From positions 45,012,001-45,076,000 of the forward strand of contig NC_067399.1 of assembly GCF_016432865.1 (NCBI RefSeq): a stretch of 64,000 nucleotides of DNA. Reading direction: 5' to 3'. The position numbers were made by a program, and so were the translations under genes. Below the pieces are notes generated by a model, which ran no database searches, had not been told where the DNA came from, and saw nothing but the letters and a program-made list of their open reading frames with translations. Positions 43,801 through 46,770 of this stretch are shown here, piece after piece (position 1 is the first letter of the stretch; every line of letters begins with the position of its first letter). The stretch comes from Antechinus flavipes (taxonomy: Eukaryota).

Positions 43801-45922
43801 AATCAAACAAGATAAAGACCCCCTCAAAATAAATATGCATAGTTAGGGGAAACAAATTCTCACATTGGCCCAATTTCAAATGGTGGGTCTCTTTTTGTAC
43901 CAGTGAACCAGTGTAGCTGAGAAAGTTAGCTGAGAGTTATCTCTACAGATCAATACTCAGCAATAGAAAGGAATTGCCAAGAGTATTAAAAACCAACTTT
44001 TAGTTTTTTTTTTTTTTTTTTTTTTTGCTCTCAAGTTCTCTCTTTTTCTAATCATAATTGATTAGTTATACACCTTTAAGGCAATTCATCTTTATCCATT
44101 TTCCCCTTTATTTCAAGTCCATCTACACTTGGCCCTTGGTCCTCCCTGGGGCAGGATTAAGAGCAGCCAGGTGTTGGCTTTTCCTTCCTGCCTTGATGGT
44201 GGTGGTACTGTGGGAAGGGAGTATGAGAAAATCTCCTCTCCTTTGAGGTGCCACATGATTTGGCTTCCAGGTTTTGTTGAATATTTTGGTCATAGCCAGA
44301 TGCATGGCAATCCCTGCCCCTTGCTCTTCCATTAGTCCCTATCCTCTGAATCTCATGCTCTAAGCTTCTGAGAAGTGTTTCTGTACAAGGGGATAGGAGG
44401 TTATTTCCTAACCTTCTCCAAAGCCTCCTTCAGATTGTCTTGATAAGCATCTGATGACTTTTGAGGTGGCTCCGGAAGGGAGGGAGTATCTTTGAGCTCA
44501 TTCTTTTGATCCTGTTTTTCAGGCTTTTGCTGATCCTTTTCTTGTTTCAGAGGTTCTTTCTGGCACATCACCTTGAAGAAGGGAACACCATCATCCATTT
44601 TCCAACTCTCACCACTAAGTACTTTTAGAGGTCTTGGGTTGGATACTCTTGTGAAATCTATTGTGGCTTGTTTTTAAGCTCTATTGATGGCTAATTTTCT
44701 TTGGGATTATGTTTCCCATTTTTAGGAGTTTGGGGCTTGGTACATGATATGTTCAAAGGAGTCTTTCATGAGTACTCTGGATTAAGTATGAAGGTACAGC
44801 CTTGTGTACTTAACATAACTTCCTAGAACTGCTGCTTTCTAGGATGATTTTTCTTAGTGTTAGAAATAACAAGAATGTATTCCCTAAAGTCAGACTTAAT
44901 AGGAAAACTTTACACCCAGGCCTTAGAGCAAGCTATGTAATATGTTATTTAGAGAAATGTGCTTCATTTGGAATTGGAAGATCTATTATTTGCACTTACC
45001 TCATAGGATTGTTGTGAAGATCCAATGAAATACACACATACAGTACTTTATAAATGCTTGACACTGTTATGATGTTAAAAGTTTGGTTGGCTAAGCCTTT
45101 ACCCTATCTTTGTATGAATAGGAAGGAAACCTAACCATGGGTATTGTATGCTTGGCTCTCCATCTGCATTACATCTGCATATATACACCCCACCCATACA
45201 CACACACACACATCCATACACATACACACACACACACATCTATTGTCTTTCAATGCTGTATTCCCTTTTATCCATTGCAGTGGATAAAATGAAATTTTGG
45301 ATTTATAGCACCTATTCTTGTGGAACCTCAAGATATTTTATCTTAAGAATTACTGTGTTGAGAAACAAGACGAATATTGTCTAACTTGTTAATACAAATA
45401 GCTGTAGGATAAGAATTCCTAATATTAAATTATTTGGTCTTCTGTCAAGAAAAATGTTTTCTCCAGAGAAGCTAAGGAATATGGATTCAGAGGAAATGAA
45501 GGGATCCCTAAAAAGTCTGGAGGTTAATGCTAAGAGCTTGAGAAATTGACAAGATTGAAAAATTCCAACATAAAGGTGAAATACAAAAAAGATATAGTTA
45601 TGAGGACAGACACACTGGAAGCCAAAGTAGAAGTCAATGAGAAATATGTTAGAGGTGCTATCATGTTCTAAAGTGACCAGAGAAATCAGGATTCATTTCA
45701 CTTCCATAATGGAGGAGAGTCAGAGCTTCTCTGTGATTTACCTGGGGAATGATTCCCCAACATCCAGTTCTTTGCAAGGCTCACCTCATTTTCCTTCACC
45801 TCGGTCGCCTTCTCAGCAGTCTCGAGTTTGTTTGCAGTTGAATCCAATTGCTTTGTACAATGTTTCAGTGCATCCCGGAGGATCTCGTTCTCCTCCTCTA
45901 GTTTACCCACTTTCTCCTTCTC
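40849..45922 (-). CDS. PMFBP1: Polyamine-modulated factor 1-binding protein 1, 3' coiled-coil exons (45922-45785, 44571-44413, 43468-43310, 42915-42748, 42025-41916, 41505-41431, 40987-40894); the 5' part runs through the repeat array and beyond the window
   Basis: Phase-compatible GT-AG exons encode EKEKVGKLEEENEILRDALKHC.., ..AYQDNLKEALEK, ..[80 protein letters not shown].., ..HWVKEQK, DNTELLGSTIQEQVKCICQLTDEKD and HLHNVMVHLQHENKKLRKEI... These match the recalled human PMFBP1 C-terminal half. The position is syntenic and convergent with DHX38. The terminal exon is uncertain. Confidence 0.85.
45196..45238. repeat. Interrupted (CA)n microsatellite
   Basis: catacacacacacacacatccatacacatacacacacacacac. 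Confidence 0.8.
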
Positions 45923-46662
45923 CTACTCCCTCATTGATCAAATGAGATAATATATGTAAAGTACATTGCAACTCTTAAAGCATTATAAATGTGACCTGTT
46001 TACTAGTATTGTGATTTTAAAAGCAAAGTGCATACTTGCTACTCTTCTCTATAATTCTTCCTTTTCTCCTGTGATACCTTGACCCTTTTCTCTAGCTTCA
46101 TTGACTATCTTTTAATTCTTCTAAAAAATTTCTCTCTTGCAAATAAAAATGGGGCAAGTTTAGTTGGAAAAGAAATGATCTTGGTTTTCCTTTTCCTTTC
46201 TTCCTCATTTTAGAAATTAGGGTTGGTAACTATCTACTTCCACTCTTATCCATTTCCCCTTTGACTTCCATGTTTAAAAACAACCAGCAAATAATTAGCC
46301 ATTGCCACATGTAACTAAAATAGGGTTAGGAAAGGCCATGATTGGGAATTGGCTTGGGGAATTCTACTAAAGTAGTCGATCAATTATCAATATTAAAACC
46401 CTCCCTATATAAAGAAAGAAGCTGACTATCTTTGAGTCATTAATTGAGATGTATAAGTGAAACCCTGAATTGACAAGTGACTAGATAGGGGTGAATGATG
46501 ACCAAGAAGCCTAGAAAGGAGCTTGGTCATAGGATTTGAGGTATTACTTATTTACTGGGTAGTGGTACATCTATGACAAAGGATGGGTGACCTTCAATAT
46601 ACAATCATTGCTCAGAGCTGTTCCTCTTTCCCACCATTTGTGGTGCTCTTGGATCTGCTCAC

Positions 46663-46770
46663 CTTTTCTACCTGCTCTTGGATCTTTTCAACAGCACAAA
46701 GCTTTCTTGAAGGTGAATCACATTGCTGAGTCTCAGCCTCAGGTTCATTTAATTTGTCCTTTTTTGACTC
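46663..46770 (-). CDS. Repeat exon A (108 nt, open; weak AAG acceptor): ESKKDKLNEPEAETQQCDSPSRKLCAVEKIQEQVEK
   Basis: Open phase-0 frame and GTGAGC donor; the consensus TAG acceptor is mutated to TCA, so an upstream AAG is assumed. Confidence 0.35.

What the first reader, a model, noticed from the sequence alone, without database searches (positions are those of the whole stretch)
45785..46770. The repeated exon derives from the genuine PMFBP1 coiled-coil exon at 45785-45922
The PMFBP1 exon (138 nt, phase 0-0, EKEKVGKLEEENEILRDALKHCTKQLDSTANKLETAEKATEVKENE) has exactly the repeat consensus length. It aligns without gaps at 14/46 identities to copy I and 15/46 to copy V. Its acceptor (caatgagggagtag|gagaagga) resembles the repeat acceptor (caatgacaagtag|gagaagga). 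The intron 45923-46662 contains unit landmarks such as tcttgcaaataaaaatgggg and gagcttggtcataggattt. This identifies the array's source and makes the conserved exon its 3'-most member; the copies then diverged strongly while the parent stayed human-like.
Basis: partly seen in the sequence, partly recalled or inferred. Interest (0 to 1): 0.72.

Follow-up and report, generated by a model that had tools for sequence, protein, structure and literature searches.

The report
Terminal coiled-coil exon of exon array
The 138-base exon at 45785-45922 and the intron before it are the last and most diverged unit of a roughly 22-copy exon-plus-intron tandem array in a marsupial sperm-neck gene (PMFBP1 by position), but whether it is the unchanged "parent" could not be tested.

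Summary
Observation confirmed. On the minus strand, 45785-45922 is an open 138-nt, phase 0-0 exon with AG/GT splice sites.

A profile of nine array units matches 46655-45779 over the whole unit (191.5 bits, E 2e-58), intron and exon in register. A protein profile of 15 copies scores this exon 17.1 bits; shuffles reach at most 7.8 and other ORF pieces at most 10.4. No homology was found in the 400 nt downstream of this exon's donor, so it is the 3'-terminal unit.

Interpretation partly supported.
- The exon has the longest branch in the unit tree, and its attachment point is poorly resolved.
- Its intron has diverged as far from the other units as its exon has (dN/dS about 1). The split is therefore old, and no special exon acceleration is needed.
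- Its physical neighbour is the 108-nt exon 46663-46770, which matches the copies better than it does.
- It keeps a heptad pattern and folds as one helix, like the downstream exons. The copies are Ser/Pro-rich and mostly non-helical, which favours a coiled-coil ancestral state.
- "Stayed human-like" is untested.

PMFBP1 identity rests on synteny (HP, TXNL4B, DHX38). The scan's other notes on this array are from this same window only.

The parts
45785..45922 (-). Exon P: 138 nt, 46 codons, phase 0-0. It is the 3'-terminal exon of the array, has a coiled-coil-type sequence, and is predicted as one helix.
   Evidence: Translation and splice sites. In-register match to the unit profile. Protein profile 17.1 bits. 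Heptad pattern. AlphaFold2 helix 2-45, pLDDT 96.8.
45923..46662 (-). Intron between the 108-nt copy and exon P. It is homologous over its whole length to the introns of the array units.
   Evidence: nhmmer hit 46655->45779, profile positions 2-803. It is 66.5% identical to the profile consensus over 615 aligned columns, with 26 indel events. Landmarks at 46135 and 46519.
46663..46770 (-). Copy c01: 108 nt, 36 codons, phase 0-0, open, with aag|GAG acceptor and AAG|gtgagc donor. It lacks the central part of the unit exon and is P's physical neighbour.
   Evidence: Protein profile 25.4 bits. Its unit 47375->46657 scores 320 bits. Tree.
46771..64000 (-). The rest of the array, which runs off the window end. 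There are 21 further exon copies in units of 370-1390 nt. 15 of them have an open frame with an in-frame AG, and 6 are broken (c02, c08, c10, c13, c15, c20). All keep a GT donor.
45385..45784 (-). Intron downstream of exon P. It shows no detectable homology to the start of the unit introns, so this is the 3' edge of the array.
   Evidence: no nhmmer hit at E <= 1000. Only the first ~40 nt look faintly similar by eye. No unit hit lies below 45779.
42748..44571 (-). Three candidate downstream exons of the same gene. d1 is about 44571/44559 to about 44413, d2 is 43477/43468 to 43310, and d3 is 42915 to 42748. All are phase 0-0 by frame and AG/GT sites. d2 and d3 have strong heptad patterns.
   Evidence: The boundaries are inferred from sequence only.

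Best explanation
Exon P (45785-45922) together with the 740-nt intron in front of it is the 3'-terminal and most diverged unit of a head-to-tail array of exon-plus-intron units. The array lies inside the coiled-coil gene next to DHX38, which is PMFBP1 by position.

All units descend from one ancestral segment. That segment ran from within an intron, through a 138-nt phase 0-0 exon, to at most a few tens of bases past its donor. Unequal crossing-over then copied it.

The history is stepwise (inferred):
1. An old split separated P from the lineage of all other copies.
2. The next oldest units are those physically next to P (c01, c03, c04, c05).
3. The bulk of the array (c06-c22) arose later by amplification of two-unit blocks.

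Because every unit is phase 0-0, any number of copies can be spliced in frame.

P kept the helical heptad character of the surrounding gene. The copy lineage changed into a Ser/acidic-rich, Pro-containing segment with an R-R/K-L-S motif, and it keeps only a short C-terminal helix.

Shown: the homology, the terminal position, the relative divergence, and the structural contrast. Inferred: the polarity (P-like state ancestral), the order of events, and the inclusion of the copies in mRNA.
For: - Whole-unit homology: 191.5 bits, E 2.1e-58, profile positions 2-803.
- Protein-level signal: 17.1 bits against a shuffle maximum of 7.8. tblastn hits lie in register down to E 8.5e-7.
- Gapless 138 = 138 nt: the intron carries 26 indel events in about 640 nt, so about 5.6 would be expected in the exon, and the net count is none.
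- Array edge: no homology past P's donor.
- Tree: P's end branch is 0.51, against 0.25 for c01, 0.24-0.27 for c03-c05 and 0.05-0.21 for the rest. The crown c06-c22 has 92/93 support. Starred subclades alternate physically.
- Grouping P with the 5'-most unit in the window is disfavoured (p-AU 0.018).
- Mismatch to the unit consensus in the intron is 33.5% for P and 26.7% for c01.
- Heptad a/d occupancy is 0.62 for P, close to 0.69 and 0.75 for the downstream exons. P has 0 Pro. The copies have 0-4 Pro (all but one at least 1) and 4-9 Ser.
- AlphaFold2: P is one helix at pLDDT 96.8. A copy modelled with its alignment has pLDDT 63 and a helix only at 35-44.
- P shares 'HC' at alignment positions 21-22 with the basal copies c03-c05 but not with the crown copies.
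Against: - There is no outgroup. The root is a midpoint, and P's attachment next to c01 has only 93/5 support.
- Nesting P with c07+c09 is not rejected (p-AU 0.075).
- No orthologue of the gene could be fetched, so it is unknown whether P, c01 or both exist outside this lineage.
- No transcript evidence was obtained.
- The two AlphaFold2 runs are not strictly comparable, because one used a single sequence and the other an alignment.
- Part of P's long branch may come from alignment error in indel-rich intron.
Confidence: 0.75

Rival explanations
1. P is the unchanged, constrained parent, and the amplified copies budded from it. The copies then diverged unusually fast under positive selection, while P stayed close to the eutherian sequence.
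For: - P is the only member with a clean heptad and a confident helix, as expected for the original coiled-coil exon.
- Exon identity to the copies (57-62%) is no higher than intron identity (66.5%). If P itself was constrained, the copy stem would need dN/dS above 1.
Against: - Intron distance between P's unit and the copies (JC 0.55-0.72) is as large as dS (0.52-0.92) and dN (0.59-0.87). Time alone therefore accounts for the exon distance.
- c01 matches the copy profile better than P (25.4 vs 17.1 bits), and c01 and c03-c05 sit outside the amplified crown in the best tree.
- The whole-library search with P found no protein at E <= 0.001. This gives no support to strong conservation, although a 46-residue query has little power.
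Confidence: 0.25
2. The copies are exon-derived pseudo-exons in a long repetitive intron and are not spliced. P, perhaps with c01, is the only functional exon of the family.
For: - 6 of 22 copies are broken.
- ML omega over 14 open copies is 0.72, only marginally below 1 (2dlnL 4.13).
- The copy is predicted to be mostly unstructured.
- No Pfam match.
- No transcript evidence was obtained.
Against: - All 22 copies keep a GT donor, and 16 keep an open frame with an in-frame AG at or near the homologous acceptor.
- Pairwise dN/dS is 0.29-0.92, below 1 in all 15 pairs.
- Conserved motifs persist across copies that differ by 16-28% in nucleotides.
- Four RNA runs hold 0.17-0.19 of the sampled words of 42700-50400. 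That is close to my estimate of 16% for the exonic share, but the words were not located, so this is only a lead.
Confidence: 0.25
3. The resemblance is due to chance or to shared coiled-coil composition, and the exon is unrelated to the array.
For: Amino-acid identity is only 22-33%, and the sequence is rich in Glu/Lys.
Against: - The non-coding intron is homologous along its whole length (E 2e-58).
- Composition-preserving shuffles never approach the observed scores.
- The downstream coiled-coil exons of the same gene do not score: the control maximum is 10.4 bits, and that piece lies on the opposite strand.
Confidence: 0.01

Closest known systems
Intragenic tandem exon duplication or amplification by unequal crossing-over (for example the LPA kringle IV-2 units, the nebulin and titin repeat exons, and the partial D3 domains of mouse zonadhesin). 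Recalled from general knowledge, not checked here.
   Same: The units are head-to-tail and contain an exon plus its intron. The exon phase is symmetric, so copies stay in frame. Edge units are older and more diverged than inner ones. Multi-unit blocks were amplified secondarily.
   Different: The host gene is a sperm head-tail coupling protein, for which two literature searches found no reported repeat expansion. The copies have left the structural class of the source exon, going from helix to a Ser/Pro-rich segment. About a quarter of them are broken.
[quoted passage not shown]
   Same: The gene lies tail-to-tail next to DHX38, beyond TXNL4B and HP. These genes are listed together at one human 16q locus in PMC5333359. 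The downstream exons are heptad-rich.
   Different: Mouse PMFBP1 is described as about 1022-1023 residues, with residues 750-1023 binding CENTLEIN (PMC8363609). An array of more than 20 extra exons would add up to about 700-900 residues just upstream of the C-terminal part. That estimate is an inference.

Membership tests
Tandem exon-plus-intron amplification (intragenic) | Homology extends beyond the exon into the flanking intron. | tested here: met
   The nhmmer unit profile covers 46655-45779, profile positions 2-803, E 2.1e-58.
Tandem exon-plus-intron amplification (intragenic) | Same strand, head-to-tail, contiguous with the other units. | tested here: met
   P's unit abuts the c01 unit at 46656/46657 with no spacer, and all main hits are on the minus strand.
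Tandem exon-plus-intron amplification (intragenic) | Symmetric phase and conserved splice signals, so that copies are frame-neutral. | tested here: met
   P is 138 nt, phase 0-0, with AG/GT sites. The open copies are 102-138 nt, all multiples of 3 by the in-frame acceptor, and all have GT donors.
Tandem exon-plus-intron amplification (intragenic) | Copies are included in mature mRNA. | not testable with these tools
Only word shares of 0.17-0.19 in RNA runs are available.
PMFBP1 orthologue | Conserved gene neighbourhood (HP, TXNL4B, DHX38, then PMFBP1 convergent with DHX38). | tested here: met
   Haptoglobin at 6669-7508 (+), E 1e-135. TXNL4B at 12581-12826 (-), E 5e-22. PRP16/DHX38 at 24477-24782 (+), E 3e-36. 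The human locus list is in PMC5333359. The exact gene order is from my own knowledge.
PMFBP1 orthologue | Sequence similarity to a known PMFBP1 protein. | tested here: inconclusive
   phmmer of P against 1.84 billion representatives found 0 hits at E <= 0.001. Word searches with the P ORF and the d2 ORF found nothing within their length limits. No Pfam family applies.
PMFBP1 orthologue | Coiled-coil architecture. | tested here: met
   Heptad occupancy is 0.62 for P, 0.69 for d2 and 0.75 for d3. P is modelled as one helix. Only weak, sub-threshold Pfam hits to coiled-coil families were seen.

The most novel reading that the evidence does not exclude
Marsupial PMFBP1 turned a duplicated coiled-coil exon into a spacer of more than 20 copies. 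The spacer would be largely disordered and carry acidic Ser clusters and R-R/K-L-S sites. It would sit just upstream of the C-terminal part that in mouse binds CENTLEIN. Such a spacer could lengthen or hinge the head-tail coupling apparatus. It would then be a molecular correlate of the long articulated connecting piece that lets marsupial sperm heads rotate on the flagellum (PMC8812575). On this reading P is the retained ancestral exon.
Probability: 0.12. Interest if true: 0.8.

Novelty: new member of a known kind. Interest (0 to 1): 0.42.

Why it matters
This fixes the 3' boundary and the origin of a large exon array inside a gene essential for sperm head-tail attachment. The array grew from one of the gene's own symmetric coiled-coil exons, together with its intron.

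It also gives a concrete case of an exon family leaving the structural class of its source. One terminal copy keeps the helical heptad character, and the amplified copies become a Ser/Pro-rich segment.

If the copies are expressed, marsupial PMFBP1 would be far longer than the mouse and human protein. That difference would be testable against the peculiar articulated sperm neck of marsupials.

Tried and rejected
A 46-residue Glu/Lys-rich query has little power at that scale.
2. A word search with the P ORF (region 1-46) and another with the d2 ORF found nothing. Full-length PMFBP1 lies outside their length limits. The third search was left unused because no exon ORF is long enough to reach full-length proteins.
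Those places were masked in later scripts and sent to no search tool afterwards.
4. Pfam and Atlas searches gave only generic sub-threshold coiled-coil hits.
5. The search for homology downstream of P's donor found none.
6. Chance or composition as the explanation was rejected.
7. Gene conversion of an unrelated exon by the array was rejected, because the whole 740-nt intron is homologous and about as diverged as the exon.
9. Metagenome collections were not scanned for P-like exons, to avoid fetching human-derived contigs. No human contig was fetched. The N run at 9416-9558 was left untouched.

Full report
**What is at the coordinates.** The gene runs on the minus strand. It is open only in that frame of that strand. 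It has a tag|GAG acceptor and a GAG|gtgagc donor, so it is a 138-nt phase 0-0 exon. Upstream in gene orientation, from 46.6 kb to the window end, lies an array of units of about 750 nt, each holding one exon. I located 22 exon copies, c01 at 46663 to c22 at 63260. All keep a GT donor. Sixteen keep an open frame with an in-frame AG at or near the homologous acceptor. Six are broken: c02, c08, c10, c13, c15 and c20.

**Is exon P a member of the family?**
- *Nucleotides.* An nhmmer profile built from nine inner units, without P, aligns 46655->45779 to profile positions 2-803 of 803, at 191.5 bits and E 2.1e-58. The match covers the full intron 45923-46655, the exon in register, and the donor.
- The intron part is 66.5% identical to the profile consensus over 615 columns, with 26 indel events. 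The exon aligns without net gaps.
- At the intron's indel density about 5.6 events would be expected in 138 nt, so the exact length has been kept by selection. This last step is an inference.
- Gapless nucleotide identity of the exon is 70-82/138 to the six 138-nt copies and 79/138 to their consensus. The codon-shuffled null is 41 +/- 5, maximum 59.
- *Protein.* A profile of 15 open copies, without P and c01, scores P 17.1 bits. Shuffles average 0.1 and reach at most 7.8 (0 of 2000 reach P). The best of 920 other ORF pieces of the window scores 10.4.
- tblastn of P against the window returns array exons, starting at their first codon, as its best non-self hits. E values run from 8.5e-7 to 4.8e-4.

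**Edge of the array.** No unit hit lies below 45779. A profile of the first 300 nt of the unit introns finds nothing in the 400 nt downstream of P's donor. P is therefore the 3'-terminal unit. The duplicated segment ended at, or within a few tens of bases after, the exon's donor.

**Relationships among units.**
- A GTR+G tree of 21 units (814 columns) gives P the longest end branch, 0.51. c01 has 0.25, c03-c05 have 0.24-0.27, and the others have 0.05-0.21.
- c06-c22 form a crown with 92/93 support. Its starred subclades alternate along the DNA: c06, c08, c10 against c07, c09, and c12, c14, c16, c17, c19 against c13, c15, c18, c20. Two-unit blocks were therefore amplified.
- P attaches next to its physical neighbour c01, but with weak support (93/5). 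Nesting P with c07+c09 is not rejected (p-AU 0.075). Grouping P with c22 is disfavoured (p-AU 0.018).
- The root is only a midpoint. With that caveat the picture is an old split of P, then old edge units next to it, then a younger inner expansion. This pattern is usual for arrays shaped by unequal crossing-over.

**Did 'the copies diverge while the parent stayed'?**
- Between P and the 138-nt copies, dN is 0.59-0.87, dS is 0.52-0.92 and dN/dS is 0.67-1.69. The exon p-distance (0.41-0.49) equals the intron p-distance (0.39-0.46). The exon is as far from the copies as neutral intron is, so age is enough to explain the low identity.
- How the changes divide between the P branch and the copy stem cannot be told without an outgroup.
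- Among the copies, dN/dS is 0.29-0.92. ML omega is 0.72, with 2dlnL 4.13 against omega = 1. Constraint is weak.
- c01 (25.4 bits) is closer to the copies than P is. It lacks the central third of the exon.

**Polarity.**
- P has a regular heptad: a/d positions are 0.62 hydrophobic against 0.15 elsewhere. It has no proline. This matches the candidate downstream exons d2 (0.69) and d3 (0.75).
- The copies score 0.31-0.62, with 0-4 Pro (all but one at least 1) and 4-9 Ser.
- AlphaFold2 models P as one helix, residues 2-45, at pLDDT 96.8. The copy at 62521-62658, modelled with alignment A1, has pLDDT 63 and a helix only at 35-44.
- In a coiled-coil gene the P-like state is the more likely ancestral one.

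**Gene identity.**
- Haptoglobin lies at 6669-7508 (+). TXNL4B lies at 12581-12826 (-). PRP16/DHX38 lies at 24477-24782 (+). They lie in that order and are followed by this minus-strand coiled-coil gene.
- The same genes are listed together with PMFBP1 at one human 16q locus in PMC5333359. The order is as I know it for human and mouse.
- Direct sequence confirmation failed. The library search with P gave nothing, and two word searches gave nothing. There is no Pfam family.
- The 'marsupial' label comes from scan note s1-200950 and was not checked.

**Expression.** Four RNA runs of one study hold 0.17-0.19 of the sampled words of 42700-50400. That is near my estimate of about 16% for the exonic share, but the words were not located. 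These places were masked and sent to no search tool afterwards. Splicing of P and of the copies therefore remains unshown.

**Context.**
- Mouse PMFBP1 residues 750-1023 bind CENTLEIN (PMC8363609).
- P lies only three or more phase 0-0 exons from the 3' end region. The array would therefore sit just upstream of the C-terminal part. This is an inference.
- Marsupial sperm have a long articulated connecting piece that lets the head rotate (PMC8812575). A link to the array is speculation.
- Two paper searches found no report of a PMFBP1 repeat expansion.

**Verdict.** This is a new instance of a known process, intragenic tandem exon amplification, in a gene where it has not been described.

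Noticed in passing
window 50284-62520 (-): Unit subfamilies alternate along the array. c06, c08 and c10 alternate with c07 and c09. c12, c14, c16, c17 and c19 alternate with c13, c15, c18 and c20. All are starred clades, so blocks of two units (about 1.5 kb) were the amplified module. In the second set, one member of each pair is mostly broken by stops or frameshifts (c13, c15, c20).
   Followed up: partly
window 56620-57159 (+): Partial array units match the unit profile on the opposite strand: 56620-56950 at 258 bits, 57027-57106, and 57103-57159. 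This is a small inversion or rearrangement inside the 1340-nt unit of c13.
   Followed up: no
window 6669-7508 (+), 11005-13006 (-), 15676-36128 (+): The neighbouring genes are the haptoglobin serine-protease-like exon, TXNL4B exons, and DHX38/PRP16 from its N-terminal exon to a last exon ending near 36128. DHX38 is convergent with the coiled-coil gene.
   Followed up: partly
window 42748-44571 (-): The three candidate downstream exons are also phase 0-0, and two are each 168 nt. The gene's coiled-coil part may therefore be built of symmetric exons in general. No homology of these exons to the array unit was detected.
   Followed up: partly
window 47814-63397 (-): The open copies share an acidic Ser cluster near the start and an R-R/K-L-S motif followed by A-E-K. 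P lacks both, as scan note s1-200990 also says.
   Followed up: partly
They lie in the intron of the c03 unit. Nothing was done with them afterwards.
   Followed up: no
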